A stretch of DNA of 64,000 nt from Dendrobates tinctorius (taxonomy: Eukaryota). The stretch spans positions 29,202,001 through 29,266,000 of the forward strand of contig NW_027361684.1 of the NCBI RefSeq assembly GCF_039654945.1, in the 5' to 3' direction. Both the position numbers and the translations under genes were made by a program. Below, piece after piece: positions 14,003 to 53,746 of this stretch (position 1 is the first letter of the stretch; each line of letters begins with the position of its first letter). The notes beneath the pieces are model-generated. The model saw only the letters and a list, made by a program, of their open reading frames with translations, had not been told where the DNA came from and did no database searches.

Positions 14003-14106
14003 GTAAGATCTCCGCAGCAGTGTATATAACTTGATGTTGTGGTTTTCACTACATGCACTGGTCTATACTAGGCTTGTGCTTAGGAACAAAAGTCTGAACA
14101 GGCAGA

Positions 14107-15540: not shown

Positions 15541-16584
15541 GTCACAGCTCTAAAGAGAGGAGGGTCAAAAAGCCCAATATGCAAAGCTACTAAGCTGCTG
15601 TCATGGGAAACTTTGTGGCCTTTCTTGCTTTCACTGCAGCTGCATCTGTTCGAATAGCTCCAAGGCTCTGAAGAGCTGTATGGATCAGACTGGTATCTGG
15701 GAGCCGCTTTACCATCTTTCTCCTTTTGAATAAAGCATGCATGCCCTCCAGTTCCAGAGTGCATATTGACAGTGGGCACCGCCAGCCTGGCGACAGCTGC
15801 TGGATGTATTCCGGCAGCATAAAGTATTAATGGCCTTCGGCCTTCACTACTGCCCGTCATAGTCTGATAAAAAGCGGTCAAAGGGCAGTTTTGGAATTTT
15901 GTGGTCATAAGATAACATACTTGGTTGGTCGTGATGCAACACCCTCCGACTCAACATATTAACCCTGATTTGAAAAAGGCTCATAGTAATAATATGATAT
16001 AAAGTTGCATTAAATAAAATATTTACAGTAATCCAGTATAAAGTAATGTAAGCCATTAAACATAATGGACCTTGGTGCCCATAACAGCCAATCACAATGC
16101 AGCTTTTATTTATATTTTCCTGAGCAATTTAAGAAATTAAAGTGGAGAAACCGGTTCTTCTCTTAGATCTCTTTAGTAAATGTTGGGGTTAAAGGGATCT
16201 CTCTGCTATATGGGGAGCATGTAACTAAATTTGGACCTTCATAACAGTCCATGAATTTCTTATCCTGGCAATGTAAATCCCTATTGACCCCCATAAATGA
16301 TCTTTTTATGTTCCCGATAGAATTGTACACGCTGCAGAGATATCCCAATGAAGATACAGACAAAATCCTAGAGCTAATCTGAGAGTGTGGATAGATCCCT
16401 TTTCTGCACCAAAATGCACAGTATCTTTGATCGTTGTTTTTTTCTAAGCACTGCATAGTAGGGCCAACGCTATATTATTGCCTGTAGATTTACTATGGGA
16501 CGTCATAAATACTCCCGTAGGTGTAACGTATAGTGCGCATTTCAGAAATACAGCATATTCTCCTCTGTTTTCATTTTTTTCCAG

Positions 16585-26553: not shown

Positions 26554-27772
26554 ATGGAGGACCTGCTGAAACACCTGGTCCAGGCCCAGACACAGGCTGT
26601 TCTTACAGCAGCTCCAGCAGAGCCAGCAGGAGCAACGGCAGCTGATGCAGCTTCTGGCATCCGCCATCCAGGAGGGCAGGACGAGGCCCCAACCCCAGGT
26701 CCGGCTGATGCCACCCCACGTCATGAAGGCGGTAAGACACGCATTGCAAAAAATGACCCCCGAGGATGATGTGGATGCCTTCCTGACGGTGTTTGAGAAG
26801 GTGGCTGAGGAAAAACTTCAGCCAGAGCGGTGGGCAGAGGTACTGGCCTCATACCTAACAGGGGAGCCCCAGAAGGCGTACTTTGACCTAACTGTACAAG
26901 ACGCCAGAGAGTATCCCAAATTAAAAGCGGAAATTCGCGCACGCTTGGGGGTAACAATGTCTACCAGGGCACAGCAACTTCATCGCTGGGCCTATCACCG
27001 GGACAAACCGCCGCGCTCCCAAATGTTCGGCCTGTTGCACCTGGTCCAGAAATGGCTGCAACCAGAGTCGTCTTCCCCAGCACAGATGGTAGAGCAAGTG
27101 GTCATGGATCGGTTTGTGCATTCTCTACCGAGACCCCTACAGACTTGGGTTGCCCAGGGTGATCCCCAAAATGCCGATGAGCTGGTTGGGCTGGTCGAGA
27201 GATACCAGGAGATGGAAGGTTCCTTGGGGAAGCAGCCCATTCCGTATTGGGGTCCCAGCAGGGGGCGGAGTCCCAAAAAGGGGTGGCGCGTCCAAGGTCA
27301 AAAGGGGCAGGGGAGGCCCAAGGACCCCACGGGTGATATTATTTGCAGGAAGTGCCACGGGCCTGGACATATAGCTGCCCGTTGTTCCCAGACCACGGAG
27401 CAGATGGACTGCAGCATGGGACGCCGTAGTTCATACTACGCATATCCAGTTTGCAGTGTGAATTCGCCACCTAACAAGGGGCCACAAGCATGTCCCGTGA
27501 AGGTGAACGGGCGAGCAGCAATGGCGCTTCTAGACTCCGGGAGCTTGGTGACCCTTTTGAGGGCCAGTTTTCATCTCAACATACTCCCGGGTAAAAAGAT
27601 TGGCGTTCGGTGCATACATGGCGATGCAAAGGACTGCCCTATGGCCAGGGTGAACATTGAAATGGCGCATGGCACAGAGTCGCATGAAGTTGGCGTTGTT
27701 CGAGATTTGTTGCATCCTATAATTATTGGCCGGTATTTCTGTGTTTTGGGATCTGTGGGGGAAGGGTTCTGA
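26554..27772 (+). pseudogene. Gypsy gag (SCAN-like capsid, CCHC knuckle) plus aspartic protease
   Basis: MEDLLKHL start; DDVDAFLTVFE..W; KWLQPE..EQVVMDRFVHSLP..WV; CRKCHGPGHIAARC; LLDSGS; frameshifted. Confidence 0.88.
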
Positions 27773-27924
27773 GTGTGCTAGCAAGAGCAGGGAACCAATC
27801 CACCCCAAGGAGGTATCGCCACCACCAGAGGCAGACGGGTTTCCATTATGTGTCCTTGTTGGGGATGAAGAGAAAGGGTCCCCTGTACCTGACATCCTGG
27901 AGTTAGGGGTGGCCGGGGAGAATT

Positions 27925-29113
27925 TTGGGACTGCCCATCATAGGGACCACGCTGAGGGAAGCCTTTAACAATGTCACCGTCATTAATGGGGTTGCACAAG
28001 AGCCGGGAGCAGACACAAGGTTTCCCCATTTTATGTTGAGTGGGGAATTGTTGTACTGGGTCACGAAAATAAGGGAAGAGGTGGGAGAGCAGTTAATAGT
28101 ACCAGGCCCCTATAGACGGAAAGTGTTGGACATGGCCCATTCACACATCTTGGGGGGACACCTGGGGGTGGAAAAAAACGCAGGAACGGATTGTACAGAG
28201 GTTCTATTGGCCTGGGTGTCACTGGGAAATAGCAAACTATTGCAGGTCTTGCCCGACATGTCAGTTAACTGCCCCCACATCTCATTTTCGGAACCCTCTT
28301 GTGCCACTGCCCATTATTGAGGTGCCATTTGAGAGAATTGCCATGGACTTGTTCGGTCCCTTGTTTAAATCAGCTCGGGGCCATCAGTATATATATATAT
28401 ATATATTAGTCATCCTGGACTACGCCACACGCTATCCTGAGGCCATTCCCCTGAGAAACTCCTTCACGAAGAGTATAGCCCTCGAGCTGGTCCATGTGTT
28501 TTCCCGGACGAGTTTGCCGAAGGAGATCCTGACCGACCAGGGGGCACCTTTTATGAGCAAGGTGATGAGGGAGTTGTGCAGAGTCTTGCAAATCTCCCAG
28601 TTGAGGACTTCAGTGTACCATCCGCAGTCAGATGGCCTTGTTGAGAGGTTTAACAAGACACTGAAGAGCATGCGGAGAAAAGTCATAGAGAAAGATGGTA
28701 GAGACTGGGATTGTCTCTTACCGTATTTACTGTTTTCTATACGTGAAGTTCCCCAGGCCTCCACAGGGTTCTCTCCCTTCGAGCTTCTGTACGGCCGGCA
28801 TCCGCGAGGTCTCCTAGATATAGCCAAGGAAACCTGGGAAGCCGAAGTCACGCCCCACAGAAGCGTCATTGAGCATGTGGCACTGATGCAGCAGAGGGTT
28901 GCGAAGGTGATGCCCATTGTTATAGAACATCTCCGCCAGGCACAAGAGGCTCAGGCCAGGGTCTACAACCGGTCAGCCAAAGTGAGGCAGTTCAATCCGG
29001 GAGACAGAGTTCTTGTGCTAATCCCGACGGTGGAGAGTAAGTTCTTGGCCAAGTGGCAAGGGCCATATGAGGTGGTGGAGAAGCCGGGAGACGTAAACTA
29101 CAAGATCCACTAA
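27925..29113 (+). pseudogene. Gypsy integrase (upstream of RT)
   Basis: HSHILGGHLG zinc-binding part; PFERIAMDLFGP, LTDQG, DGLVERFNKTLK (DDE); WQGPY module; frameshift near 28178. Confidence 0.9.
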
Positions 29114-29197
29114 CCCGGAAGATGGAAGCCATACCAGGTTTACCATGACAACCTCATCAAGCCGTGGCAAGATAGAGAGCCAGCGGTAACTCCGTGC

Positions 29198-30660
29198 TTG
29201 CTGGGCAACCTAGAAGGGGAGGTTGGAGCAGTTACCATAGCGGAGACGCTATCAAAGGCCCAGAAACAGCAGTGCCGGGAGTTACTCCAGAAAAACAGGG
29301 ACCTCTTCTCAGAGTTTCCGGGGTGCATGAAGGTGGTGGAGCATGAAGTTCTGACCAAGCCACATGTGCGGGTGAACGTGAAACCGTATCGTATTCCTGA
29401 GGCCTGGCGAGAGGGAATCTCCAAGGAGGTGCAGCGTATGTTGAAACTCGGGGTCATTGAGGAATCCAAGAGCGGCTGGTCGAGCCCGATTGTCCTGGTC
29501 CCAAAACCTGATGGTGAATGGAGGTTCTGCAACGAATACCGGAAGCTGAATGAGGTCTCCAAGTTCGATGCTTATCCCATGCCACGCGTTGATGAGCTCA
29601 TCGAGAGACTTGGACCTGCCAGGTACATAACCACTTTGGATCTGACAACGGGATACTGGCAGATCCCCATGGCACAGGAAGCCAAGGAGAAGACGGCATT
29701 CTCCACACCAGACGGGTGCTTCCAGTATGTCCGGATGCTGTTTGGCCTGCAGGGAGCTCCGGCAACCTTCCAGAGGGCTATGGATAGAATCCTTGCACCT
29801 CATAAGCTATACGCTGCCGCGTACCTGGATGATATAGTCATCTTTACCCCGGACTGGGAGTCTCACCTGGAAAAGGTCCAAGCAGTGCTTGACGCTCTAA
29901 GGGAGGCGAGGTTTACAATAAACCCGAAAGTGTGCCTTGGGTAAGGAGGAAGCCAAGTACCTCGGATATGGAGAGGGGCGTGGCGAGATCAAACCCCAAA
30001 TCAATAAAGTGGAGGCAATTCAAACATGGCCGATACCACTGTCAAAGAAGCAAGTTAAAGCCTTCCTGGGGATTGTGGGATATTACAGGAGGTTCATCCC
30101 AAACTTCGCCACAATGGCTGCACCTCTAACTGATCTGCTTAAGGGGATAAAGTCAGTGATGGTCAGCTGGTCCGAAGAAGCAGAGTCAGCCTTCCAAGAA
30201 ATGAAGGGAGCTCTTTGTAAGCAACCCGTTTTGGTGGCCCCAGACTTTAAATGTGAATTTGTCCTCCAGACAAGATGCCTCAGATGTCGGGGTAGGAGCA
30301 GTCCTTTCCCAAGAGATACGTGGGGAGGAGCATCCTGTTCTCTACTTGAGTAGGAAGTTGACTTCTTGTGAGAGAAATTACTCAGTTGTAGAGGAGTGTT
30401 TGGCCATAAAATGGGCAGTGGATACATTACGGTACTACCTGGTGGGACGGAAGTTTAGATTAATATCCGACCATGCCCCACTCAGGTGGATGAGGGAAAC
30501 AAAGGGTAAGAATGCTAGGGTCACCCGCTGGTTCTTAGCCCTTCAAGACTTTAGCTTCCATGTAGAGCATAGGGCCGGGAAGCTACATGGGAATGCCGAT
30601 GCCCTCTCCAGAATCCCTTGCCTGGTAGGTGAAAGTGCCAAGCCCCACGGCTTTAGGTAG
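29198..30660 (+). pseudogene. Gypsy reverse transcriptase plus RNase H
   Basis: WSSPIVLVPKPDG, LDLTTGYWQI, FGLQGAPATFQ, YLDD; DASDVGVGAVLSQ, ECLAIKWA, SDHAPL, NADALSR; two frameshifts. Confidence 0.92.
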
Positions 30661-37583: not shown

Positions 37584-40500
37584 CAGGGTCGGACTGGGGT
37601 GTCTAGGGCCCACCAAGGGAATAAATTTTAGGGGCCCACCTACAGTAATGTACAACTCAACATTTAGGCTTTGAGACTGCGGAATTACACCATGGGTTCT
37701 TTTGCCGTATATCCCACGCCAAATCTGCATCATTTCAGCATCCTAATTCTACTAAAAGCTGCACCGTTGTTCATATGCTGCAGATCTTTCCGCACTACAA
37801 TTCATTTAATCCTTTAGGGCCGCAGGCCTGTTTTCACCTTAATGCCCAGGCCATTTTTTGCAAATCTGACCTGTGTTACTTTGAAGTTAAAAAGTGACCC
37901 CATTTTGGAATCTACACCCCCAAGGATTGACGTAGGGGGTATAGTGATCACTTTGTCCCAACAAGAGTTCCATGGTAGATGCTACACAGCCCAGCCAATC
38001 GAAGCGTTCGTATCTGCAGGGGGGGCTAAAATTCGCCCGGACCAGCCAGGCAGCGTTGCTGCCTGCAGGTCTTAGCGACGAAAGCCTCCCGGTACCCGTG
38101 CGATTAGCTGCCCCAATAGGCAGCACAGGTCCCCAATAGGCAGCATTGGTCCCTATAGGCAGCACAGGTCCCCAATAGGCAGCACAGGTCCCCAAAAGGC
38201 AGCACAGGTCCCCAAAAGGCAGCACACGTCCCCAATAGGCAGCATTGGTCCCAAATAGGGAGCAAAGGTCCCCAATAGGCAGCACAGGTCCCCAATAGGC
38301 AGCACAGGTCCCCAATAGGCAGCACAGGTCCCCAATAGGCAGCACAGGTCCCGAATAGGTAGCATTGTACCCAATAGGCAGCACAGGTCCCCAATAGGCA
38401 GCACAGGTCCCCAATAGGCAGCATTGGTCCCCAATAGGCAGCACAGGTCCCGAATAGGCAGCATTGTACCCAATAGGCAGCACAGGTCCCCAATAGGCAG
38501 CACAGGTCCCCAATAGGCAGCACAGGTCCCCAATAGGCAGCATTGGTCCCGAATAGGCAGCACAGGTCCCGAATAGGCAGCACAGGTCCCGAATAGGTAG
38601 CATTGTACCCAATAGGCAGCACAGGTCCCCAATAGGCAGCACAGGTCCCCAATAGGCAGCACTGGTCCCCAATAGGCAGCACAGGTCCCCAATAGGCAGC
38701 ACAGGTCCCGAATAGGTAGCATTGTACCCAATAGGCAGCACAGGTCCCCAATAGGCAGCACAGGTCCCCAATAGGCAGCATTGGTCCCCAATAGGCAGCA
38801 CAGGTCCCGAATAGGCAGCACAGGTCCCGAATAGGTAGCATTGTACCCAATAGGCAGCACAGGTCCCCAATAGGCAGCACAGGTCCCCAATAGGCAGCAC
38901 TGGTCCCCAATAGGCAGCACAGGTCCCCAATAGGCAGCACAGGTCCCCAATAGGCAGCACAGGTCCCCAATAGGCAGCACAGGTCCCGAATAGGTAGCAT
39001 TGTACCCAATAGGCAGCACAGGTCCCCAATAGGCAGCACAGGTCCCCAATAGGCAGCACACGTCCCCAAAAGGTAGCACACGTCCCCAAAAGGTAGCACA
39101 CGTCCCCAAAAGGTAGCACACGTCCCCAAAAGGTAGCACACGTCCCCAATAGGCAACACACGTCCCCAATAGGCAACACACGTCCCCAATAGGCAACACA
39201 CGTCCCCAATAGGCAACACACGTCCCCAATAGGCAACACACGTCCCCAATAGGCAACACACGTCCCCAATAGGCAACACACGTCCCCAATAGGCAACACA
39301 CGTCCCCAATAGGCAACACACGTCCCCAATAGGCAACACACGTCCCCAATAGGCAACACACGTCCCCAATAGGCAACACACGTCCCCAATAGGCAACACA
39401 CGTCCCCAATAGGCAACACACGTCCCCAATAGGCAGCACACGTCCCCAATAGGCAGCACAGGTCCCCAATAGGCAGCACAGGTCCCCAATAGGCAGCACA
39501 GGTCCCCAATAGGCAGCACAGGTCCCCAATAGGCAGCACAGGTCCCCAATAGGCAGCACAGGTCCCCAATAGGCAGCACAGGTCCCCAATAGGCAGCACA
39601 GGTCCCCAATAGGCAGCACAGGTCCCCAATAGGCAGCACAGGTCCCCAATAGGCAGCACAGGTCCCCAATAGGCAGCACAGGTCCCTAGTAGGCAGCACA
39701 GGTCCCCAATAGGCAGCACTGCACAGGTCCCCAATACGCAGCACATACAGACAGTAACTCACTGACCCGGCATTGGCCTGTGTACCAGATACACAGGCGA
39801 CAGGCTGCGACGCGTCTGACTCTGAAGAAGAAGACGACTGTCACTGTAATCCCGCGGCCGCAGTTGAGGCCTCCTGGATGGCCAGGCCCCGCACCGCCCG
39901 TCCTGCTCCTCCGGCCTCCGGGTGTGCGCAAATCACCGGTCCGTCACGCTGCCTGGGCTCAGCTCACATTGACTTGACAAGTCTGGGCAGTGGCGGTGAC
40001 TACTCACAGGTCCCCAATAGGCAGCACAGGTCCCCAATAGGCAGCACAGGTCCCCAATAGGCAGCATTGTTCCCTATAGGCAGCACAGGTCCCCAATAGG
40101 CAGCACAGGTCCCCAATAGGCAGCACAGGTCCCCAATAGGCAGCACAGGTCCCTAGTAGGCAGCACAGGTCTCCAATAGGCAGCACAGGTCTCCAATAGG
40201 CAGCACAGGTCCCCAATAGGCAGCACTGGTCCCCAATAGGCAGCACTGGTCCCCAATAGGCAGCACTGGTCCCCAATAGGCAGCACAGGTCCCCAATAGG
40301 CAGCACAGGTCCCCAATAGGCAGCACAGGTCCCCAATAGGCAGGCACAGGTCCCTAATAGGCAGCACAGGTCCCCAATAGGCAGGCACAGGTCCCCAGTA
40401 GGCAGCACAGGTCCCCAGTAGGCAGGCACTGGTCCCTAGTAGGCAGGCACAGGTCCCCAGTAGGCAGGCACAGGTCCCCAGTAGGCAGCACAGGTCCCCA

Positions 40501-41572
40501 ATAGGCAGCACAGGTCCCCAATAGGCAGCACAGGTCCCCAATAGGCAGCACAGGTCCCCAATAGGCAGCACAGGTCCCCAATAGGCAGCACAGGTCCCCA
40601 ATAGGCAGGCACAGGTCCCTAGTAGGCAGCACAGGTCCCCAATAGGCAGGCACAGGTCCCTAGTAGGCAGCACAGGTCCCCAATAGGCAGGCACAGGTCC
40701 CTAGTAGGCAGCACAGGTCCCCAATAGGCAGGCACAGGTCCCTAGTAGGCAGGCACAGGTCCCTAGTAGGCAGGCACAGGTCCCCAATAGGCAGCACAGG
40801 TCCCCAATAGGCAGCACAGGTCCCCAATAGGCAGCACAGGTCCCCAATAGGCAGCACAGGTCCCCAATAGGCAGCACTGCACAGGTCCCCAATACGCAGC
40901 ACATACAGACAGTAACTCACTGACCCGGCATTGGCCTGTGTACCAGATACACAGGCGACAGGCTGCGACGCGTCTGACTCTGAAGAAGAAGACGACTGTC
41001 ACTGTAATCCCGCGGCCGCAGTTGAGGCCTCCTGGATGGCCAGGCCCCGCACCGCCCGTCCTGCTCCTCCGGCCTCCGGGTGTGCGCAAATCACCGGTCC
41101 GTCACGCTGCCTGGGCTCAGCTCACATTGACTTGACAAGTCTGGGCAGTGGCGGTGACTCCTCCAGCGAGCTCCAGTTACCCGCCAATGCCGCACTGCGT
41201 GCAGGAATCAGGGCGGGGGGCGGGGGCCTCCGGGGTGTGCTGTGCTCTGTCCAGTAGTCAGAGACAGAGCAGAGAACGACCCGACGTATCAATGCGCGGT
41301 ATCCGGCGCGGCGGGCAGGACTAGGAAGCAGAGCAAGAGTCCTAATCTGCTCCTTGCCGGCTGCACTGTAGGAACATCAAAGTACCGGATCGCGGCTGTG
41401 AATCTCCCCGGTTCGGGGAACTGGCTGCTTTTTTAACAACCGGTTCCACCGAACCGGGGAGAACCCGCTGAATGCCACCCCTGGGTACGAGCGACCAGTG
41501 AGTGACAGTGACATTCGGGGGCAGGGCCCACCGAGGGATCCAACGGTACCTCGGTGGGCCAGTCCGAGCCTG
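37584..41572. mobile_element. Non-autonomous hAT element (~4 kb) carrying a minisatellite
   Basis: TIRs CAGGGTCGGACTGG / CCAGTCCGAGCCTG; perfect 8-bp TSD CCCACATC (37576-83, 41573-80). Confidence 0.88.
38110..40900. repeat. 20-bp minisatellite, interrupted by a duplicated unique block
   Basis: ccccaataggcagcacaggt with 19- and 21-bp variants. Confidence 0.95.
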
Positions 41573-42500
41573 CCCACATCACAGCACCCCCATAACAGTG
41601 CCCCCACATCAGCGCACTCCCATAACAGTGCCCCCAGATCAGCGCACTCCCATAACAGTGCCCCCACATCAGCGCACCCCATAACAGTGCCCCCACATCA
41701 GCGCACCCCATAACAGTGCCCCCACATCAGCGCACCCCATAACAGTGCCCCCACATCAGAGCACCCCATAACAGTGCCCTCACAATATAAGTGCCCCCAC
41801 ATCAGAGCACCCCACAACAGTGCCCCCACATCACAGCACCCCATAACAGTGCCCCCACATCAGAGCACCCCATAACAGTGCCCTCACAACATAAGTGCCC
41901 CCACATCAGAGCACCCCATAACAGTGCCCCCACATCACAGCACCCCATAACAGTGCCCCCACATCACAGCACCCCCATAACAGTGCCCCCACATCACAGC
42001 ACCCCCATAACAGTGCCTCCACATCACAGCACCCCCATAACAGTGCCCCCACATCACAGCACCCCCATAACAGTGCCCCCACATCACAGCACCCCATAAC
42101 AGTGCCCCTACGAGACCAGTCTGCCCCACACAGCATTACAGTGCCTCCCCAACGCCATAGTCCCCCCACAATGCTAGTGCCCCCCCAACACCAGAGTGTT
42201 ACATTACCCACACAGCACAAGAGTCCCATAAAATACCAGTGCCCCCCCAACGCCAAAGCGCCACCCATAACAGTGCCCCCAACACCAGTGTCCCATAACA
42301 TAAGTGCCCCCAATGTCAGAGTGCCCCATTGACAGAGCCCCCACAGCATCAAAGCTCCCCCATAACAATGTCTCCACACCAGTGTCCATAACATAACAGT
42401 GCTCTCAATGTCAGCATGCCCCATAACAGTGCCCCCACAACGCCAGAGTGCCCCATAGCAGTGCCCTCACAATGCTGCCCCATAACATAATAATGCCCCT
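41573..42500. repeat. 29-30-bp minisatellite (continues 37484-37583 on the other side of the hAT insertion)
   Basis: cacccccataacagtgcccccacatcacag units, degenerating rightwards. Confidence 0.9.
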
Positions 42501-44465
42501 GTTCACATGTTCATTCTGTTGAGTGTCTCTTAACCTCTTCAGATCTCAAACACACCAAGTGGTGAGAAGTCAGTGACTATTCTTCAGACTTTTCTAGCTT
42601 GGGAGGCAACCTACTTTTCGAATTGGAAAAAAAAAAAAAAAAAAAAGACCCTGGAGACACTTGGGACCCCATTTGAGCATTTTGTAAACATTTTTGCCTC
42701 AAAAACAAATTATTGCATTCAGGTTAGACTGTCAGGTTGGACTGTCGGGTTGGTGCCATTTAGCTACAGCCAGAGTTTTCTTTTCTCCAGCTTGCGCAGT
42801 AGCATCTGTCGGTAGGAGATTCTACAGCGCAGGCCCTGCCACGATGAATGTAATTTTCCCCCCAAACAATAAGTTATACATTATGCAATCTAGGGGGCCG
42901 GTCAGTGAGGGATCAGTGACCTGTCAGGAGCCATACAGACCCCACACAGGCCGCGCCGCAGCACGAGCATATCATTAACTCAAAACTGACAAAGATGATC
43001 ACAATCCTGCTGACAGGTTCCCTCTAATAGATTTTAAAACTAAGAATTACCCAAAAAAGTTTACAGAAAACGCCAGAGAAAAACATTAAATAAAACGTCT
43101 TTTTTGCCCAGCTGAAAAAAAAAAAGTGTAAAAAAAATACCCTTAGGATTCAGCTGTAATTGCCTGTTCCAGCAAGCATCACGTGACCCGATTTGTGGAC
43201 TGGATTTTTTTCTGGGTTCTCTCAATACTCTATTAAGGTTCAGCCTCCTGGTGCCAGAAGAAAATGTATCAAAGACTATGTGCACATGTCGAGTATTTCG
43301 GTGCAGAAATTTCTGCATCTCTTGGTAGGAAAAATGTGCATTTTTGCTGCATTTCCGTTTTTGGACAGCAGTGAATGTTAACCCCTTTCTGACATCGGAC
43401 GTAATAATCCGTCCATGTTCCCTGGGCCTGTTTGACCAGGGACAGATTATTACGTCATTTTTTAAATGCGACCGAAGTCGCGGTGATCACACTAAGATTC
43501 CGGTGTCATCAAGAGCACCGATCATAGGCTGCTGCCTAGCAATGCCAGGCATGGCCTGGACCCACTCTGATTGGTGCAATCTATATAGTCGTTGATCGTG
43601 CCAATCACAGGGCCCAGCCGCAGTGTGACCATACTGTGACCTGCTTAGGATCAGAGCTGTAAGAGCACCAATCCTAGGCTGGTGCCTGGCAATGCTCTGT
43701 GACCTGTGTCACCACGCTGCACATCCTCACAGTAGCTGAGGATTTCTGCAGAGCCGTCATGGTATCAGATTGTCGCTGTGCTGGGCCTTATGGTGCCAAA
43801 GAAGCCTGTGACACCACAATCCCTCAATGCTGAAGAGAGAAGAAAAGAGAAGACAGCTGTAAGTGTTTTGATCCCTGCCAAATCTCTTCTCATCCACACA
43901 AATCCCCCTCTTCTTACCCCCTCCACCCCACTTTGCGCCACCTCTGTACACACATCCAGCAGCCGCTGAGCTTTGATTAGTGACGCAGTTCACCGATCAG
44001 CACACGTGCTCGCTGTTTTACACTTTTCTTTTCACTTTCTTTTCTCTCCAGTTGCTGCTTTTTTTCTTTTCGCTTTTTCTTTTCAAATGAAAAAGCTTAC
44101 AATGCAGAAAACAGAAAAAGATAATGTGAGCTCAATGTTGAAGTCTATAGAAGTCGAACATACATGGAACCACAAGCCGACCACTCATCTGTAGCAATTA
44201 AAAAAAAAACAAAACAAAAAAAAAAACCACACAAAACAAAAAGGAGAACATTCCATCTTCTGGTAAAAATTTTCAGAGTAATCTTTATTCCATCAAAAAA
44301 GAACTTAAGAGACATGATGGACAGGAACAAGCGACGCGACTCGAATACGGTTGTTCTTTATCAAGCTTGGAAATTTTATCAGAAGCTGGAACATTTTTAC
44401 TTTTTTTTTTTTTTTTTTTTAAAGTTTACACCAAGCATACTCTCACATATACAACTAAATAAAGT

Positions 44466-44894
44466 TTCACATGTAGAAGAAGAAACAGACCAGCACTGCT
44501 GCAATGTTCCTGGACTTTCAATGCGATACTGGATCGGGACATACGGGTGCCAAGCCACAGGAAATGCAAAAACCAATGTCCATAATCCTCAGAAGTGAAA
44601 AAGTGACAAATGGCACTCGCCGTCCTCAAATGTCCTTTTTTTTTTTTTTTTTTTTTACATAAAACAGGTGAACGTGGAATGAAAAAGTACCGGACGACGG
44701 CCACTTTGCGCACACAATGCTCTTCTACGGGTCCGTAGAAGCGCATTGTGTACGCGAAATGGCCGTTGTCCGGTACTTTTTCATTCCATGTTCACCTGTT
44801 TTATGTAAAAAACAAAAAAAAAACAAAAACAAACAAAGGACATTTGAGGACGGCGAGTGCCATTTTCCACTTTTTCTTTTCTGAAGATTATGAT
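44466..44894. mobile_element. Palindromic Penelope-like insertion with degenerate hammerhead-like core
   Basis: 14-bp TSD CAACTAAATAAAGT (44452-65, 44895-908); ~150-bp inverted arms meeting at ~44731; core ccgtaga-agcgcattgtgtacgc-gaaatggccgt. Confidence 0.7.
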
Positions 44895-46396
44895 CAACTA
44901 AATAAAGTACTGACACAATCACATGAAAAAAAAAAAAAAATGTCGTCCTGCTCGTCCCAAAAACGCTATTCAGAGGAGGAGGAATATGCTTTACTCGTCT
45001 TCGACACAGAGAGCGAGGGAGAGGATCCCACCTTTCTTTTCAGATTCGACCACCTCAGGTGCTGCCGATCCGCCACACAGACTTCCGAGGATAGGGGAAA
45101 CAGCACTCCCACCCCCATTACAGACCCCGAATGGACCTCGCCCCCCGAAAATTATGAGCCACCGATTCCGGATTTTGTGGCATAATCAGGAATCAAGTTT
45201 GGCACCACCGGCCTCACAGAACTAGTCTTTCTCATAGTCTTTTTCTCTGAGGATTTTGTTAACCTCATGGTGGGCCAAACTAATTTGTATGCTCATCAAT
45301 TTTTGGCACAAAACCCTGATTCATCATTTTCTAACTGGTCTCCTGTAGACACAGTTGAAATAATGCAGTTTTGGGGCCTGGTCCTTCACATGGGGATCTT
45401 GTAGAAGCCAGAACTTTGGCAATATTGGAGTGTTGATGTTTTACACAACAATCCAGTGTCCCGAATGGTCATGGCCCGGACACGTTTTGAGGCCATCCAC
45501 AAATTTCTGCATTATGGTAATGCACGGTGTCCTCCCCGAGATTACCCCAACTTTGACCGTCTCTGTTCAAAGTTCAGCCGGTCATCAAACACTTCAATAA
45601 AAAGTTTGCTGAAGTGTACGTGTCTCAAAGGGACAGCTGCGTGGATGAGTCCCAAAAACGCTAATTGGGCAGATGCTTAGAAGGGGTGACAGCAGAGCCC
45701 AATGCAGCGACCATCTGCTGGTCGTCAAGTACAAGAGGGATGTCTTTTTCTTGAGGACCCTCAGCACTGTACTAGGGACCTCTGCTCAGGTCTGCAAACC
45801 AGACTGTGTTCTGGGGTATAACAAAAACATGGGAGGAGTTGATCTCTGATCAAGTCATCCAGCTTAACAATGCTTTGAGAAAGGCCAAGGTGTGGTACAA
45901 GAAGCTGGCCATGCACATCGTACAGATGGCAATGCTCAATGCTTTCCTGCTGTCACGATTTGCAGGCCAGTCTGCTACGTCTTACCTTCAGTTCCAGGAG
46001 GTAGTGATCAAGGCATTAATCTTTGAAGATCAGGAAGGAGCGAGCTCCAGTACCTCCGGAACTGATGTTGCTTGTATCGTACTAGGTCAATATTTCCTGG
46101 GGGAGGTCCCTCAAAGTGGAAAAGGCAAGTCACAAAAGAGGTGCTGAGTGTGTTATAGAAGGGGAAGTATCATTTCTCCTTGCGGAGAATGACATGCTAA
46201 GCATGTCGAGGTGAGGAGACTTAAAGCCGCAATGCTCCTCTGGGAAATATGCTAATTATGAAAATTGTCTCTTCAGAGAGGAAGAGGACTAGAACTCTAG
46301 TGCCACCTATTGGAGGTAGCAATCCTAAAAGTCAATGTTGACCCTTTAACGAGCCTAGTTACATGACTTAGGATAAAAGCCAAGCCAGAATCTCCA

Positions 46397-46441
46397 TTTG
46401 CAGACACTGTGTTTCGGGGTACTGCCCCTCATCAGTGCAAA
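46397..46441 (-). ncRNA. Type-I hammerhead ribozyme (minus-strand copy)
   Basis: Exact reverse complement of the 46550-46594 motif. Confidence 0.82.
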
Positions 46442-46549
46442 GTGGGAGATCTGGTTTGGCTGTGAGAGAGGCGTCTTCTTACTTCTTACTTATGATACTT
46501 CTTGGATATCGTTCAGACGCCTCTCTCACAGCCAAACCAGATCTCCCAC

Positions 46550-46594
46550 TTTGCACTGATGAGGGGCAGTACCCCGAAACACAGTGTCTGCAAA
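46550..46594 (+). ncRNA. Type-I hammerhead ribozyme (plus-strand copy)
   Basis: Stem I TTTGCA/TGCAAA, core CTGATGA (46556-62), stem II GGGG-CAGTA-CCCC, GAAA, minimal stem III CAC-A-GTG, GUC triplet; predicted cleavage after C46588. Confidence 0.85.
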
Positions 46595-49132
46595 TGGAGA
46601 TTCTGGCTTGGCTTTTATCCTAAGTCATGTAACTAGGCTCGTTAAAGGGTCAACATTGACTTTTAGGATTGCTACCTCCAATAGGTGGCACTAGAGTTCT
46701 AATCCTCTTCCTCTCTGAAGAGACAATTTGCATAATTAGCATAGAAGGGGAATACGCAAGGACTCCATTTATCAATGCGACATCTCCCCAATAAACCTGG
46801 CCTGTGTATGAAAGAATGCTTCAGACTGTACCACACCTCCATGGACTACTAAAATTAATTTCTGACTTACCCAACTGACATATGACAACCTGACAAACAC
46901 TACACAACTCACGTATGCCACTACATTATAAAATTCACATACTATTAAACAGTAGATTAGTTCCAAAAGGGGGCACTTGTGGGGCATTGCCACCGTTTAG
47001 GAACATCTAGATAAGTTCCTTGGGTGGTCTAGTTTCCAAAATGGGGTCACTTATGGGGGGTTCCTACTGTTTAAGCACATCAGGGGCTCTGCAAATGTGA
47101 CATGACGCCAGCAGACCATTCCATCAGTCTGCATTCCAAAATGTCACTACTTCCCTTCCGAGCCCCGACGTGTGCCCATACAGTAGTTTTCTCCCACATA
47201 TGGAGTATCAGCGTACTTAGGACAAATTGCACAACAACTTTTGGGGTCCAATTTCTCCAGTTACCCTTAGGAAAATAAAAAATTGGGGGCTAAAAGATCA
47301 TGTTTGTGGAAAAAAAAACAACAACATGATTTTATATTTTCACGGCTCTACGTTATAAACTTCTGTGAAGCACTTGGGGGTTCAAAGTGCTCACCACACA
47401 TCTAGATAAGTTCCTTGAGGGGTCTAGTTTCCAAAATGGTGTCACTTGTGGGGGGTTTCTACTGTTTAGGCACAACAGGGGCTCTCCAAACGCACCATGG
47501 CGTCCGACCTCAATTCCAGCCAATTTTGCATTTAAAAAGTCAAACGGCGCTCCTTCCCTTCCGAGCTCTGCCGTGCGCCCAGTGTTTTTTCCCCATATAT
47601 TGGATATTGGCATGCTCAGGAGAAATTGCGTTACAAATTATGGGGTTCATTTTTTTCTGTTACCCTTGTGAAAATAAAAAAAAAAGTCTAAAGTTACATT
47701 TTAGTGAAAAAAAAAAAAAAAAGTTAAATGTTCATTTTTTTCCCTTCACATTCCATTAATTCATGTGAAGCACCTGAAGGGTTCATAAACTTCTTGAATG
47801 TGGATTTGATCAGCTTGAGGGGTGCAGTTTTTAGAATGGTGTCACTTTTGGGTATTTTCTGCCATATAGACCCCTCAAAGTGACTTCAAATGTGAGGTGG
47901 TCCCTAAAAAAAAAAATGGTTTTGTAAATTTTGTTGTAAAAATGATAAGTCGCTGGTTAAATTTTAACCCTTATAACTTCCTAACGAAAAAAAATTTGTA
48001 TAAAAAATTGTGCTGCTGTAAAGTGGACATGTAGGAAATGTTGTTTATTAACTATTTTGTGTGACATATTTCGCCAATTTAAGGGCATAAAAATGTAAAG
48101 TTTGAAAATTGCTACATTTTCCAAATTTTTGATTTTTTACACAAATAAATGCAAGTTATATCAAAGAAAATTTACCACTAACGTGAAGTACAATATGTCA
48201 CAAAAAACAGTCTCAGAATCACCGGGATCCATGGAAGCGTTCCAGAGTTATTACATCATAAAGAGACAGTGGTCAGAATTGTAAAAATTGAAGCGGGCAT
48301 TAACGTGCAAACCACTCTGGGGGGTAAAGGGGTTAAAGAGATAAATAAATATAGATATATAAAATTGCACAACCCCACTTCACCCGACATATAAAACTGC
48401 ACCCTGTGGACAGCTTTTTCTGATTAAATAAACAAAATATGGCCCTGGCCACTGCAGTCGTGCTCATACTGTTTTGCACTGATGTCTGCACGAACACATA
48501 TATATATATAGCCTGCAAATATTTCAAAGTGACAATTATCAGTCCTGGAGATAGGCAAACTTAAAGTTCATGGTCGTTGACCGGACTTTGGCTTCACAAT
48601 AGCAGCCTCTTATGCAGTTAGTGATTCAAGACTTTGCCGATTACAAATGTTAAGAATGTTATATTACATCACTATTGTCAAAATCAAGATTACATTAATC
48701 TGCTGCTCAAAGTTGACATTTGGACTGCAATATGGGTAAAGGGTCATTTATCAAACATGGCAAGATGAGATTAAACCTGATTAATGGTTAACACACTTCT
48801 CGTCCTGCATTCACCTAAATAGTTGCACAGGCACAATAACGGTATGTGCACATGTTGCAGATTTGCCTGCGGAAATTTCTGCTCAGAATCTGCATCTCTT
48901 GGCAGAAAACGCAGGTAAAAATCATCGCGCATTTGATGCGGATTTTCATGCATTTTATTCATGCGGATTAGTATGCATTTTTTTAAGCTAAATAAAGATA
49001 TGTTATTTAACAAAAAAAAAAAAAAGAATTGTGATGTCATTTCTTTGTCCAACCTCTTTTACATACTCCATTGAAGAATGTTACACACACACACATAGAT
49101 ATATATCTATAGGTAGAAAAAAATCTGCGTTA

Positions 49133-51166: not shown

Positions 51167-53746
51167 TTAGGGAGGGACCACCGCCTGAAGGACCCTTCTC
51201 CCGAAGGTCAGGTCAGACGTAGAGGCTAGATCTAGGCGATAGTGTTTGAAAAAGGTAGAAGGTGTTGACCAGGTGGCCGCCTTACAGATCTGTTCTATTG
51301 ATACCTCTGATCTTTCTGCCCATGAGGTCGCCATTGCTCTCGTAGAGTGGGCTTTTAGACCCTCCGGGACGGTATTCCCGCTGCATGAGTATGCCAGGGC
51401 AATCGCATCCCTTATCCATCTTGCCAGGGTACCTTTGGACGCCCCGAGCCCCTTACGAGGTCCCTGGAAACACACAAAGAGAAATCCTTCCTTCCTACAT
51501 CCCTTGGTGGCCTCTAGGTAGTGCACTAAGCACCTCTTCACATCTAATGTGTGAAATTTCTCCTCTCCTCTATTCGTAGGGTTTGGGCAGAAGGAAGGAA
51601 GGACTACCTCCTGTGATCTATGGAAGTGTGTTGCTACCTTGGGCAAATATGCAGGGTCAGGTTTCAATATAATTCTATCCTCCATAATTTTAATGAATGG
51701 GGGTAATGCCGATAAGGCTTGTATGTCACTCACTCTGCGAGCCGATGTTAGGGCCACTAGCAATATCGTTTTTAATGATAGGGTCTTTAGTGGAGCTGAC
51801 TGAATAGGCTCGAATGGGGGTCCTGTTAGGGCTGACAACACTAAGTTCAGATCCCATGATGGTACTTTCTGGGTAGCTATTGGTCTAGACCTGGCTGCGG
51901 CCCTCATAAACCGTGATACCCAAGGGTCGCTTGCCACCTCCTGATTATAGAGGGCGCCTAGGGCCGCTACCTGTACCCTCAGTGTGTTAGTCGCTAGTCC
52001 CTGTTCTAACCCCCTTTGGAGGAATTCCAGGATTTTATCCATTTGTATTCCATCCTGAACCTTTGCCCCCGAAATGGATAGGAATTTCCTCCAGGTTCTA
52101 CCATAGGCTTTGATTGTAATTGGTTTTCTACTTTTTTGTAACGTAGAAATTAGATTTTCTGAAAATCCTTTCCACCTCAGCAGTGACCTTTCAAATTCCA
52201 TGCTGTTAAATGGAGGTTCACTGCTTGGGGGTGTAGCACAGGACCCTGCGATAGAAGGTCGGGGAGTTCTGGTAGAACCCAGGGGTCGGTTACTGACATT
52301 ATTCTGAGCCATGAAAACCATGTTCTTTTTGGCCAGAAAGGGGCTATAAGTATTACCCGAGCCCCCTCTTCCCTGACTTTCCTTATCACCGCCGGGAGGA
52401 GAATGGTCGGTGGGAAGGCATACAGTAGTCCCCGTGTCCATGGGAGCATAAATGCGTCCAGGGTCTGAGGATTCCCCTTGGGATTTAGAGAACAGAATGC
52501 TTCCACTTTTTTGTTTTTGTGGTCTGCAAATAAGTCTATGTCTGGGGTTCCCCACATTTCCACAATCTTCTGAAAAACGGACTGATTTAGAGCCCACTCC
52601 CCTTGATGTAGTTGGGTACGGCTCAGAAAGTCTACTGTTTGGTTCTCTACTCCCCGTATGTGTAGCGCCGATAGGGACAGTAAGTTTTCCTCGGCTAACC
52701 TGAATATCTCGGAGGATGCCTCCATTAGCGTTCTGGACCTGGTTCCCCCCTGGTGGTTTATATAGGCCACTGTTACTCGGTTGTCCGAGAATATCCAGAC
52801 ATGATGGCCCTTTAATGCTGGCAAAAAGTGACTCAAGGCATAATTTACTGCTAGCAGTTCTTTTTGATTCGAGGAGGCTTTTAGTTCTTGACTTCTCCAT
52901 CCCCCTTGAGCCACACTGATGCCCATGTGTGCTCCCCATCCCACAGGACTGGCGTCGGTGGTAATTACATGTGTGATCTTGGCCTCCCAGGGGATCCCTT
53001 TGGACAAGTTGTTTTTGTCCTCCCACCAGGCTAGGGAATGAATAGTTTTTGAAACTAGCGTAATATGATGTTCCAAGTGGTCTCCTAAGGCCCGCTGGTT
53101 GGTCAGGATATCCCACTGCAGATCCCTCATGTGTATTTGTGCCCACTTGACCACCGGCAAGCATGCAGAGAGGGACCCTAACAGGGACATTGCTCGTCTT
53201 AGTGTCATAGAAGGGTTTTGCCTCGCTTTTTGTACCATATGGATAATTCTGTCCTTTTTGTGATCTGGCAAGTAACACACTTGGATGTTTGAATCCAGTG
53301 TCAGGCCTAGGAACTCCTGGACTCTCCTTGGCTCCAGCCTTGACTTTTTCAGGTTCAGAAGCCACCCGAGGTTTTTTAGAGTGCTCATCACTCTGTCCCT
53401 CTGTTCTGTGCATTTCTGGCCTGAGTTGCTCGCTATTAAAAAGTCGTCCAAATAAGGCACTATCAGAACATCCTGTTCTCTTATGTGAGCCATCATCTCT
53501 GCCACCAATTTCGTAAAGACCCGTGGAGCCACTGAGATCCCAAATGGCAGGGCCTTGTATTGGAATTCTCTTATTTCTCCTGCTATCGAGACTGCTAGCC
53601 TGAGGTATTGCATGGATTCTTTGTGAATGGGGACATGGTAGTAGGCATCGCTGAGGTCTAAGACCACCATAAAGCATTGCGGAAAGAGAATTTTGATGGT
53701 CGATTTGATCGATTCCATCTTGAATTTTTCGTTCTTGATATAGCAA
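51167..53746 (-). CDS. DIRS tyrosine recombinase ORF (YR domain from Met ~52201; upstream part overlaps RT in another frame)
   Basis: TSARRVSDIQAL, HSTRAMATSWA, AATWSTPSTFFKHY: complete R-H-R-W-Y catalytic set. Confidence 0.9.
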   Translation of the reverse strand: MLYQERKIQDGIDQIDHQNSLSAMLYGGLRPQRCLLPCPHSQRIHAIPQASSLDSRRNKRIPIQGPAIWDLSGSTGLYEIGGRDDGSHKRTGCSDSALFGRLFNSEQLRPEMHRTEGQSDEHSKKPRVASEPEKVKAGAKESPGVPRPDTGFKHPSVLLARSQKGQNYPYGTKSEAKPFYDTKTSNVPVRVPLCMLAGGQVGTNTHEGSAVGYPDQPAGLRRPLGTSYYASFKNYSFPSLVGGQKQLVQRDPLGGQDHTCNYHRRQSCGMGSTHGHQCGSRGMEKSRTKSLLESKRTASSKLCLESLFASIKGPSCLDILGQPSNSGLYKPPGGNQVQNANGGILRDIQVSRGKLTVPIGATHTGSREPNSRLSEPYPTTSRGVGSKSVRFSEDCGNVGNPRHRLICRPQKQKSGSILFSKSQGESSDPGRIYAPMDTGTTVCLPTDHSPPGGDKESQGRGGSGNTYSPFLAKKNMVFMAQNNVSNRPLGSTRTPRPSIAGSCATPPSSEPPFNSMEFERSLLRWKGFSENLISTLQKSRKPITIKAYGRTWRKFLSISGAKVQDGIQMDKILEFLQRGLEQGLATNTLRVQVAALGALYNQEVASDPWVSRFMRAAARSRPIATQKVPSWDLNLVLSALTGPPFEPIQSAPLKTLSLKTILLVALTSARRVSDIQALSALPPFIKIMEDRIILKPDPAYLPKVATHFHRSQEVVLPSFCPNPTNRGEEKFHTLDVKRCLVHYLEATKGCRKEGFLFVCFQGPRKGLGASKGTLARWIRDAIALAYSCSGNTVPEGLKAHSTRAMATSWAERSEVSIEQICKAATWSTPSTFFKHYRLDLASTSDLTFGRRVLQAVVPP

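What the first reader, a model, noticed from the sequence alone, without database searches (positions are those of the whole stretch)
46167..46740. Young TSD-flanked palindrome carrying a canonical hammerhead ribozyme on each strand
Seen: a 574-bp non-coding insertion with a 12-bp TSD, an ~80-bp one-sided extension with small hairpins, and ~229-bp arms with ~2 mismatches. Each arm holds a complete type-I hammerhead (CUGAUGA, GGGG/CCCC stem II, GAAA, CAC-A-GUG stem III, GUC site; stem I extends through TCTCC/GGAGA and CCAG/CTGG). Known: minimal type-I hammerheads with unstable stem III act as dimers and mark Penelope-like elements, retrozymes and newt satellite 2. Inference: a recently mobile non-autonomous family mobilised in trans by a Penelope-type RT/GIY-YIG protein. 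A read-through transcript from either strand would hold one sense ribozyme and its antisense copy, so hairpin formation could compete with self-cleavage and yield ~230-bp dsRNA.
Basis: partly seen in the sequence, partly recalled or inferred. Interest (0 to 1): 0.88.

Follow-up and report, generated by a model that had tools for sequence, protein, structure and literature searches.

The report
Inverted double hammerhead-retrozyme insertion
This is a real, recent retro-insertion of two facing copies of an abundant ~326-nt non-coding repeat that carries a self-cleaving hammerhead ribozyme; both the repeat type (animal retrozyme) and the inverted insertion form (Penelope-type) are already described, so it is a clean example, not a new kind.

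Summary
A 574-bp non-coding insert (46167-46740) lies between perfect 12-bp target duplications. It has 229-nt inverted arms with 2 mismatches, a 38-nt centre and an 81-nt one-sided extension. Each arm carries a complete type-I hammerhead core facing outward. My descriptor found only these two hits in the window and none in 300 shuffles, but Rfam does not call it.

Public-run contigs show the arms belong to a very abundant family in at least three labelled organisms. The family unit is about 326 nt and closes head-to-tail. The "extension" is the unit's own 3' part, and 23 nt of the centre are the unit junction. The mobile thing is therefore a ~326-nt hammerhead monomer, an animal non-LTR retrozyme (salamander satellite-2-like). 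The palindrome was made at insertion.

Four features match the published Penelope-like-element insertion signature: two outward-facing 5'-truncated copies, a one-sided tail, the duplication, and 3-nt microhomology at both junctions. The Penelope enzyme is reported to cut and extend both DNA strands and to start at two sites.

Not shown here: cleavage, transcription of this locus, and which reverse transcriptase acted.

First-stage notes report the same architecture elsewhere in this genome. Verdict: new member of a known kind, modest interest.

The parts
46155..46166 (.). Left copy of the 12-bp target-site duplication ATAGAAGGGGAA. Its last 3 nt (GAA) also match the family sequence, giving junction microhomology.
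   Evidence: D2, 100%; family continues ..CGATATCCAA-GAA-GTATCAT
46167..46247 (-). One-sided 81-nt extension. It is the 3' part of the family unit (the 'tail'), present only in the minus-sense copy. It holds two small hairpins.
   Evidence: Loose ends of other copies run from the right-arm end into this same sequence (46738 behind).
46248..46476 (-). Left arm: the minus-sense copy of unit positions about 17-245.
   Evidence: (I1)
46385..46454 (-). Type-I hammerhead on the minus strand, with extended helix I. Predicted cut after C46403 (minus strand).
46477..46491 (.). 15-nt filler (TCTTACTTCTTACTT) at the join of the two cDNAs. It is not part of the unit.
   Evidence: RNA-run contig X15 has CCGCAAGGAGAA here instead.
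46492..46514 (+). The 5' end of the plus-sense copy: the last 7 nt of one unit (ATGATAC) joined to the first 16 nt of the next. This is the head-to-tail unit junction.
46515..46740 (+). Right arm: the plus-sense copy, ending at the internal 3' end site. The next 3 nt (ATA, 46741-46743) are shared by the target and the family (microhomology).
46537..46606 (+). Type-I hammerhead on the plus strand. Helix I is 6 bp, plus an internal loop and 5+4 further bp. Helix II is 4 bp with loop CAGUA. Helix III is ACAC-A-GUGU. Predicted cut after C46588.
46726..46733 (+). Octamer ATTTGCAT near the 3' end of the right copy. The left copy has ATTTTCAT (46258-46265), caused by the private change at 46261. About 95% of family depth has the intact G.
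46741..46752 (.). Right copy of the target-site duplication.
45267..46852 (+). Host: a decayed piggyBac-type transposase remnant, interrupted by the insertion near its C-terminal Cys-rich end.
   Evidence: two colinear weak hits to PF13843: profile 18-52 at E=3.6e-4 and 317-349 at E=0.1; reading of the sequence

Best explanation
The insert is one retrotransposition event of a non-autonomous, non-coding, ~326-nt-unit hammerhead repeat (an animal non-LTR retrozyme). The event left two 5'-truncated copies head to head. The proposed mechanism has three steps, all inferred from the anatomy and the literature.

1. The target was opened with nicks 12 bp apart, leaving two 3' overhangs.
2. Each overhang annealed by 3 nt to retrozyme RNA and primed reverse transcription inward. 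The top strand (..GAA) started at the distal start site and gave the 310-nt minus-sense copy with the 81-nt tail. The bottom strand (..TAT) started at the internal start site about 81 nt upstream and gave the 249-nt plus-sense copy, which runs across a unit junction.
3. The two cDNAs were joined in the middle with 15 nt of filler.

The template was therefore multimeric or circular RNA, uncut at the ribozyme site. The most likely enzyme is a Penelope-like RT/GIY-YIG protein acting in trans.

The ribozyme itself probably works only in a double-hammerhead: helix III cannot form within one molecule but pairs between two copies. In the family's life cycle it would trim multimeric transcripts to monomers. 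In this palindromic copy a read-through transcript would fold into a ~230-bp hairpin instead.
For: Shown here:
- Anatomy, target duplication and arm identity.
- The hammerhead is far beyond chance.
- Helix III is 0 kcal/mol as a hairpin and -8.4 as a duplex. Two 70-nt ribozymes cofold into a double hammerhead at -56.6, against 2 x -26.6 apart.
- Family abundance: summed contig word depth is 1e5-5e5 over the element, about 7e3 on the repeated host flank and 75-300 beside it. In DNA run X1, 13,599 contigs match at >=90% identity and 2,166 at >=99%. Figures are similar in X5 (organism B). The family is also present in RNA-labelled runs X15 (organism A) and X17 (organism C).
- Unit closure: loose ends and 'opposite strand' joints 46164>46502 join unit end to unit start. 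An X15 contig reads CCGCAAGGAGAA directly before 46492. All these strings map to the predicted places.
- Two classes of 3' end: many contigs leave the family at about 46257-46262 and 46734 into dissimilar A/T-rich sequence, while others run on into the tail.
- A contig of a diverged paralogous host copy lacks the insert and has a single target.
- In the ribozyme core the family varies only at N7 (46560/46431) and in loop 2 (46569). C46546>A and the partner G46596>U (seen as 46395 C>A) are both majority alleles, which fits a compensatory C-G to A-U change in helix I.
- The 326-nt unit folds well as a circle: -103.8 kcal/mol, z = -6.4.

From papers:
- Amphibian type-I hammerheads sit in 330-350-nt retrozymes, are expressed as linear and circular RNA, and cleave well only as dimers (PMC7229834).
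- Retrozymes are related to Penelope terminal repeats (bioRxiv 10.64898/2026.07.22.740005).
- Penelope insertions are typically 5'-truncated, often with an adjacent inverted 5'-truncated copy and a one-sided tail (PMC8557442).
- A purified Penelope-type protein cuts and extends both strands and starts reverse transcription at two internal sites that define the tail (PMC11167929).
Against: - No Rfam hammerhead model reaches threshold.
- No cleavage evidence: the runs are held as contigs, so molecule ends could not be read (table 6 is empty). Contig ends at 46590 occur in DNA-type run X5 too, so they say nothing.
- The window has no Penelope ORF, and homology of the unit to a Penelope terminal repeat could not be tested.
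- The tail here is about 81-95 nt, longer than the 30-40 nt reported.
- Indel variants near the octamer blur the exact internal end.
- Twin priming is also known for LINE-1, so the enzyme is not proven.
- No read spans the palindrome centre, so its existence rests on the assembly plus structural arguments.
Confidence: 0.7

Rival explanations
1. Same retro-insertion by dual (twin) priming, but the reverse transcriptase came from a LINE (L1, L2 or CR1 type), not from a Penelope-like element.
For: Twin priming with a 5' inversion and 7-20-bp target duplications is classical for LINE-1 (established knowledge). A 12-bp duplication and junction microhomology fit that too. Cervera & de la Pena leave LINEs open as possible mobilisers.
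Against: There is no poly(A) or A-rich 3' end at either outer end. The two alternative 3' ends (tail) and the frequent inverted copies are described as specific to Penelope-like elements. Retrozymes co-occur with these elements and are related to their terminal repeats.
Confidence: 0.13
2. The arms are not a separate non-autonomous family. They are the heavily 5'-truncated 3' end (terminal repeat) of an autonomous Penelope-like element.
For: Penelope insertions are mostly strongly 5'-truncated and carry hammerheads in their terminal repeats. First-stage notes report Neptune-type Penelope elements in this genome (untested).
Against: Contigs from several runs join unit end to unit start after about 326 nt with no ORF between. 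The hammerhead is the 'canonical' 6-bp/4-bp type with loops, typical of retrozymes, not the minimal Penelope type. Depth is roughly even along the unit.
Confidence: 0.08
3. A single cDNA folded back and primed on itself (snap-back), or an inverted duplication arose after insertion. In either case only one priming event on RNA took place.
For: The arms are 99% identical and share subfamily-specific alleles.
Against: The left copy holds 81 nt of family sequence that the right copy lacks. The centre holds 23 nt of unit sequence in plus sense, and 13 of these have no complement in the left copy. Neither copy can therefore be a pure copy of the other. The right copy ends where many other family copies end.
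Confidence: 0.04
4. An assembly fold-back artefact, or a DNA transposon (MITE or foldback element).
For: Palindromes are a known long-read artefact. No read or contig spanning the centre was obtained.
Against: The palindrome is confined to an element bounded by an exact 12-bp duplication inside colinear host sequence, and a paralogue shows the empty site. The arms have 2 mismatches, unequal length and a non-palindromic centre. The outer termini are not inverted repeats of each other, and 12 bp is not a DNA-transposon duplication length.
Confidence: 0.03

Closest known systems
Animal non-LTR retrozymes / salamander satellite 2 (Epstein & Gall 1987; Cervera & de la Pena 2020, PMC7229834)
   Same: A non-coding unit of about 330 nt (here about 326). 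One type-I hammerhead per unit, with 6-bp helix I, 4-bp helix II and a helix III too weak to act alone, so a dimer is needed. Head-to-tail copies, very high copy number, target duplications longer than 4 bp, GC under 50% (45%), presence in RNA libraries, and an octamer motif in the unit.
   Different: Helix III here is ACAC-A-GUGU. That is neither the 1-bp stem with palindromic tetraloop of HHR_Amex1 nor the 2-bp stem with tetraloop of HHR_Amex2 as described in the text. This copy is an inverted pair rather than a tandem or solo copy. Circular RNA and cleavage were not tested here.
Penelope-like element insertion architecture (Craig et al. 2021, PMC8557442; Frangieh et al. 2024, PMC11167929)
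   Same: Strong 5' truncation, an adjacent inverted 5'-truncated copy forming inverted repeats, an extra tail at one end only, a hammerhead in the repeat, and a target duplication. In vitro the enzyme cuts and extends both strands and starts at two sites.
   Different: No RT/GIY-YIG ORF is present. Both copies are short non-coding pieces. The tail is about 81-95 nt rather than 30-40 nt. [quoted passage not shown]
LINE-1 twin priming (5' inversion)
   Same: Two cDNAs primed from the two strands of a staggered break and joined internally, flanked by a target duplication.
   Different: There is no poly(A). Both segments cover the same part of the unit, which needs a multimeric or circular template or two RNAs, whereas L1 inversions join adjacent parts of one mRNA.

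Membership tests
Hammerhead ribozyme, type I | Conserved core C3 U4 G5 A6 N7 G8 A9 ... G12 A13 A14 ... A15.1-U16.1, H17, with three helices and open helix I | tested here: met
   Every core position is present on both strands. Helices I, II and III are 6, 4 and 4 bp. 0 hits in 300 shuffles.
Hammerhead ribozyme, type I | Match to a curated Rfam hammerhead covariance model at gathering score | tested here: not met
   No hit at gathering score. Only RAGATH-1-hammerhead at 13.6 bits against a cut-off of 56.3, E=4.1. The 1-nt loop of helix III probably costs the score.
Hammerhead ribozyme, type I | Self-cleavage at the predicted site | not testable with these tools
   The runs are held as contigs, so no molecule ends are available. 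Needs in vitro transcription of a monomer and a dimer.
Hammerhead ribozyme, type I | Conservation pattern across copies respects the core and the helices | tested here: inconclusive
   At >=5% of depth, variants in the 33-nt core lie only at N7 and in loop 2. A possible compensatory C-G to A-U change is seen in helix I. Linkage on single molecules was not seen, and 14 variant rows were not shown.
Animal non-LTR retrozyme | Short non-coding unit (170-400 nt) with one type-I hammerhead, occurring head-to-tail | tested here: met
   A 326-nt unit was rebuilt from this copy. End-to-start junctions are seen in contigs of runs X1, X5, X15 and X17. No ORF exceeds 62 aa.
Animal non-LTR retrozyme | High copy number, dispersed, with target duplications above 4 bp | tested here: met
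   Depth is 1e5-5e5 against 75-7e3 in the flanks, with thousands of distinct contigs. 12-bp duplication.
Animal non-LTR retrozyme | Expressed as linear and circular monomer RNA | tested here: inconclusive
   Family contigs are present in RNA-labelled runs X15 and X17, including a unit junction, but DNA carry-over cannot be excluded.
Penelope-like element insertion (mobilised in trans) | Inverted 5'-truncated copy plus a one-sided tail within one target duplication | tested here: met
   compared
Penelope-like element insertion (mobilised in trans) | Sequence homology of the unit to the terminal repeat of an RT/GIY-YIG element in the same genome | not testable with these tools
Metagenome pattern scans were blank.

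The most novel reading that the evidence does not exclude
Palindromic retrozyme inserts such as this one are in vivo footprints of the dual-strand priming that has so far been seen for a Penelope-type enzyme only in vitro. Their outer ends would map that enzyme's two reverse-transcription start sites on a non-autonomous RNA (here about 81-95 nt apart, each used with 3-nt microhomology). Their centres would show that the template was multimeric or circular and uncut. A genome-wide census of such inserts would then give direct, architecture-based proof that Penelope elements mobilise retrozymes. It would also identify thousands of built-in long-hairpin RNA sources.
Probability: 0.45. Interest if true: 0.45.

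Novelty: new member of a known kind. Interest (0 to 1): 0.3.

Why it matters
It is a well-preserved natural record of a single retrozyme integration: perfect duplication, two near-identical arms, tail, junction microhomologies and a central join. It therefore bears on an open mechanistic point, namely how hammerhead retrozymes are reverse-transcribed and by which enzyme. The link between retrozymes and Penelope elements currently rests on co-occurrence and on similarity to the terminal repeat. Insertion signatures like this one add independent, mechanism-level support. Beyond that it is ordinary: one of probably tens of thousands of copies, sitting in a dead transposon.

Tried and rejected
- Rfam at gathering score over the whole window and at permissive E-values on the element and on one arm. 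No hammerhead family reached threshold. The miRNA, sRNA and lncRNA hits are below threshold and are artefacts of the perfect hairpin.
- BLAST of the element against the window: no further copy within the 64 kb.
- Two pattern scans of metagenome contigs with the ribozyme core: blank, as expected for an animal repeat.
- A look-up of earlier findings by sequence: blank.
- Contig ends at 46590, considered as evidence for the cleavage site. Rejected because the DNA-type run X5 shows the same end.
- The snap-back model and the MITE model: rejected on the asymmetries.
- Pfam on the largest host ORF alone gave nothing at E<=0.01. Only piecewise weak hits to the piggyBac-type transposase family were found.
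- The second palindrome at 44466-44894 was checked with my hammerhead descriptor: no hit.
Full report
**1. Observation**

The repeat finder reports inverted arms 46248-46476 and 46515-46743: 229 nt, 99% complementary, 38 nt apart. It also reports an exact 12-nt direct repeat ATAGAAGGGGAA at 46155-46166 and 46741-46752. The two arm mismatches are at 46261/46730 and 46289/46702. The insert is therefore 46167-46740 (574 bp), with an 81-nt stretch (46167-46247) present only on the left. It holds no ORF longer than 62 aa.

The hammerhead core lies on the plus strand at 46556-46588 and in mirror image on the minus strand at 46435-46403. It reads CUGAUGA, then helix II GGGG/CCCC with loop CAGUA, then GAAA, then helix III ACAC-A-GUGU, then C17. 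Helix I is 6 bp (UUUGCA/UGCAAA). It continues across an internal loop into 5 bp and then 4 bp. A type-I descriptor of my own found only these two sites in the 64-kb window and none in 300 dinucleotide-preserving shuffles, both strands. The motif is not chance.

Rfam does not support it formally. There is no hit at gathering score. On the isolated arm there is only a 13.6-bit match to RAGATH-1-hammerhead, which aligns the CUGAUGAG, CGAAAC and GUC blocks. The sub-threshold miRNA-type hits simply reflect a long perfect hairpin.

**2. Host and empty site**

The flanks are a decayed piggyBac-type transposase remnant. Two colinear ORF pieces hit PF13843 weakly: profile 18-52 at E=3.6e-4 and profile 317-349 at E=0.1. 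By my own reading, the sequence around the insert encodes the usual C-terminal Cys-rich end, with an in-frame TGA at 46145 and a frameshift.

One contig of run X5 carries 30 letters of a diverged paralogue of the left flank, joined directly to the right flank with a single copy of the target. This is an empty site. With the duplication it shows that the 574 bp arrived as one insertion.

**3. What the arms are**

I laid Logan contigs of four public runs on 45900-47000.

- The summed word depth is 1e5-5e5 over the element. It is about 7e3 on the repeated host flank and 75-300 on the less repeated flank.
- In DNA run X1 (organism A) 13,599 contigs match at 90% identity or more, and 2,166 at 99% or more.
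- Figures are similar in X5 (organism B).
- The family is also present in the RNA-labelled runs X15 (organism A) and X17 (organism C).
- The tool warns that depth is not a copy number. I read it only as "very abundant, with many near-identical copies".

The loose ends of these contigs are the informative part.

- Contigs that leave the window at 46738 continue with ATTTCCCAGAGGAGCAT. This is the reverse complement of the left extension.
- Contigs that leave at 46164 continue with ..CGATATCCAA. This is the reverse complement of the centre, 46502-46511.
- An X15 contig has CCGCAAGGAGAA directly before 46492. This is the end of the extension in sense orientation.
- Contigs in X1 and X17 show a joint "46164 > 46502, opposite strands".

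I checked that each string maps where this predicts. Together they say that the family sequence runs from the end of the extension (..GGAGAAATGATAC) straight into TTCTTGGATATCGTTC-AGACGCC.., the inner start of the arms. The family unit therefore closes on itself after about 326 nt, as tandem DNA or circular RNA.

Built from this copy, the unit is 326 nt with 45% GC. As a circle it folds to -103.8 kcal/mol, against a shuffle mean of -71.9 (z = -6.4, 61% paired).

So the extension is not an appendage. It is the 3' part of the unit. Likewise 23 of the 38 central nucleotides (46492-46514) are a unit junction. Only 46477-46491 is filler.

**3a. Two kinds of 3' end in the family**

Many contigs leave the family at about 46257-46262 and at its mirror, about 46734. 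They go into mutually dissimilar, A/T-rich sequence (agreement about 0.4). Others run on into the extension. At the far end they leave about 11 nt beyond 46164.

The family thus has an internal 3' end, close to where the right arm stops, and a distal 3' end, at or just beyond where the left copy stops. Indel variants next to the octamer blur the exact internal position by a few nucleotides.

**4. Mechanism**

The ribozymes face outward, so each copy has its 3' end at an outer boundary. At both boundaries 3 nt are shared between target and family: GAA on the left, ATA on the right.

The simplest reading is as follows.

- Nicks 12 bp apart left two 3' overhangs.
- Each overhang annealed by 3 nt to retrozyme RNA and primed cDNA synthesis inward, one at the distal site and one at the internal site.
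- The two cDNAs were joined with 15 nt of filler.

Snap-back synthesis and later inverted duplication are excluded. The left copy holds 81 nt that the right lacks. The centre holds unit sequence whose complement is absent from the left copy.

Both copies cross the ribozyme cleavage site, and the right copy crosses a unit junction. The template was therefore uncut and multimeric or circular. Both arms share several minority alleles of the family, for example at 46315/46676 and 46357/46634. They came from the same source.

**4a. Ribozyme action**

Helix III cannot form within one molecule: 0 kcal/mol as a hairpin. As a duplex between two copies it gives -8.4 kcal/mol. Two 70-nt ribozymes cofold into a double hammerhead at -56.6, against 2 x -26.6 apart.

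At 5% of depth or more, the 33-nt core varies in the family only at N7, the one free core position (46560 and its mirror 46431), and in loop 2 (46569). C46546>A and the change of its partner G46596 to U (seen as 46395 C>A) are both majority alleles. This fits a compensatory C-G to A-U exchange in helix I, but linkage on single molecules was not seen.

A transcript through the whole insert folds into a hairpin of about 230 bp, at -477 to -483 kcal/mol. This would sequester both ribozymes. No read evidence bears on it: in X15 the flanks have zero depth, and contigs give no molecule ends.

**5. Comparison with what is known**

- Cervera & de la Pena 2020 (PMC7229834) describe animal non-LTR retrozymes. 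These are 170-400-nt non-coding tandem units with type-I hammerheads, GC under 50% and long target duplications. In axolotl the units are 330 and 350 nt, with more than 120,000 motifs. They are expressed as linear and circular RNA and cleave well only as dimers. The authors name Penelope elements as the likely mobiliser.
- Cervera & de la Pena 2014 (PMC4209133) define the canonical metazoan type-I motif as 6-bp helix I, 4-bp helix II and a short palindromic helix III acting as a dimer. That is the form seen here.
- Li, Clavereau & Pollet 2026 (bioRxiv 10.64898/2026.07.22.740005) find retrozymes in all seven amphibians sampled, with a mean unit of 316 bp. They show co-occurrence with Penelope elements and relatedness to their terminal repeats.
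- Craig et al. 2021 (PMC8557442) describe Penelope insertions as strongly 5'-truncated, often with an adjacent inverted 5'-truncated copy and a tail at one end only.
- Frangieh et al. 2024 (PMC11167929) show that a purified Penelope-type protein cuts and extends both strands, and that it starts reverse transcription at two internal sites whose interval is the tail.

The present insert combines the first three descriptions (what it is) with the last two (how it was put in).

It differs in four ways. The helix III sequence is different. The tail is about 81-95 nt, against 30-40 nt. Microhomology is visible at both junctions. Both copies are short non-coding pieces.

The window has no RT/GIY-YIG ORF. 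Pfam found only SCAN, rve and RVT_1 of an LTR-type element at 26.6-29.9 kb, and a LAP2alpha-like domain in the DIRS-like element. Any enzyme therefore acted in trans. Its identity is inferred, and a LINE remains a minority alternative.

**6. Earlier notes of this scan**

First-stage notes on the same genome list many similar items: TSD-flanked palindromes with hammerheads, retrozyme monomers of 318-351 nt, 5' inversions, and Neptune-type Penelope elements. I did not test them.

They agree that the architecture recurs. One such item lies in this window at 44466-44894. There I confirmed the 14-bp duplication, the inverted arms and a one-sided 115-nt extension. My descriptor found no hammerhead there.

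**7. Verdict**

The mobile unit is a ~326-nt hammerhead retrozyme, and the palindrome is a product of integration with a Penelope-type signature. This is a new member of a known kind and a clean specimen, of modest interest. Not shown here: cleavage, circular RNA, transcription of this locus, and which enzyme acted.

Noticed in passing
window 44466-44894: A second, unrelated insertion with the same architecture, 1.3 kb upstream in the same host remnant. It has a 14-bp duplication CAACTAAATAAAGT (44452-44465 / 44895-44908), inverted arms of about 150 nt (89-92% identical, with an internal A/T tract), only 2 nt between the arms, and a one-sided 115-nt extension on the left. My hammerhead descriptor finds nothing in it.
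   Followed up: partly
window 45267-46852: The host is a decayed, internally shortened piggyBac-type transposase remnant. It has an in-frame TGA at 46145-46147, where a paralogous contig reads CGA, and a frameshift in the C-terminal Cys-rich part.
   Followed up: partly
window 46726-46733 and 46258-46265: A perfect octamer ATTTGCAT sits a few nt before the internal 3' end of the unit. The left copy carries a private change to ATTTTCAT. About 95% of family depth keeps the G. Next to it the family has indel variants (ours has GCATAATTA-GCATATTT, others only GCATATTT). From memory, newt satellite 2 is reported to use an snRNA-type, octamer-containing promoter; this was not checked in a paper here.
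   Followed up: partly
window 26645-29944: ORFs with SCAN (gag-like), integrase core (rve) and RVT_1 domains on the plus strand: an LTR/retrovirus-type element.
   Followed up: no
The 858-aa ORF at 51167-53743 beside it has no Pfam hit at E<=0.01.
   Followed up: no
window 14031-15908 and 37887-42424: GC-rich, strongly skewed stretches with long ORFs open in several frames on both strands. This looks like low-complexity or tandem repeat DNA rather than genes.
   Followed up: no
window 46432-46559: Sub-threshold Rfam hits to miRNA precursor families (MIR533 at 67 bits against a cut-off of 80, mir-4679, MIR1514) on both strands. They come from the perfect hairpin at the palindrome centre and are not evidence of a miRNA gene.
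   Followed up: yes
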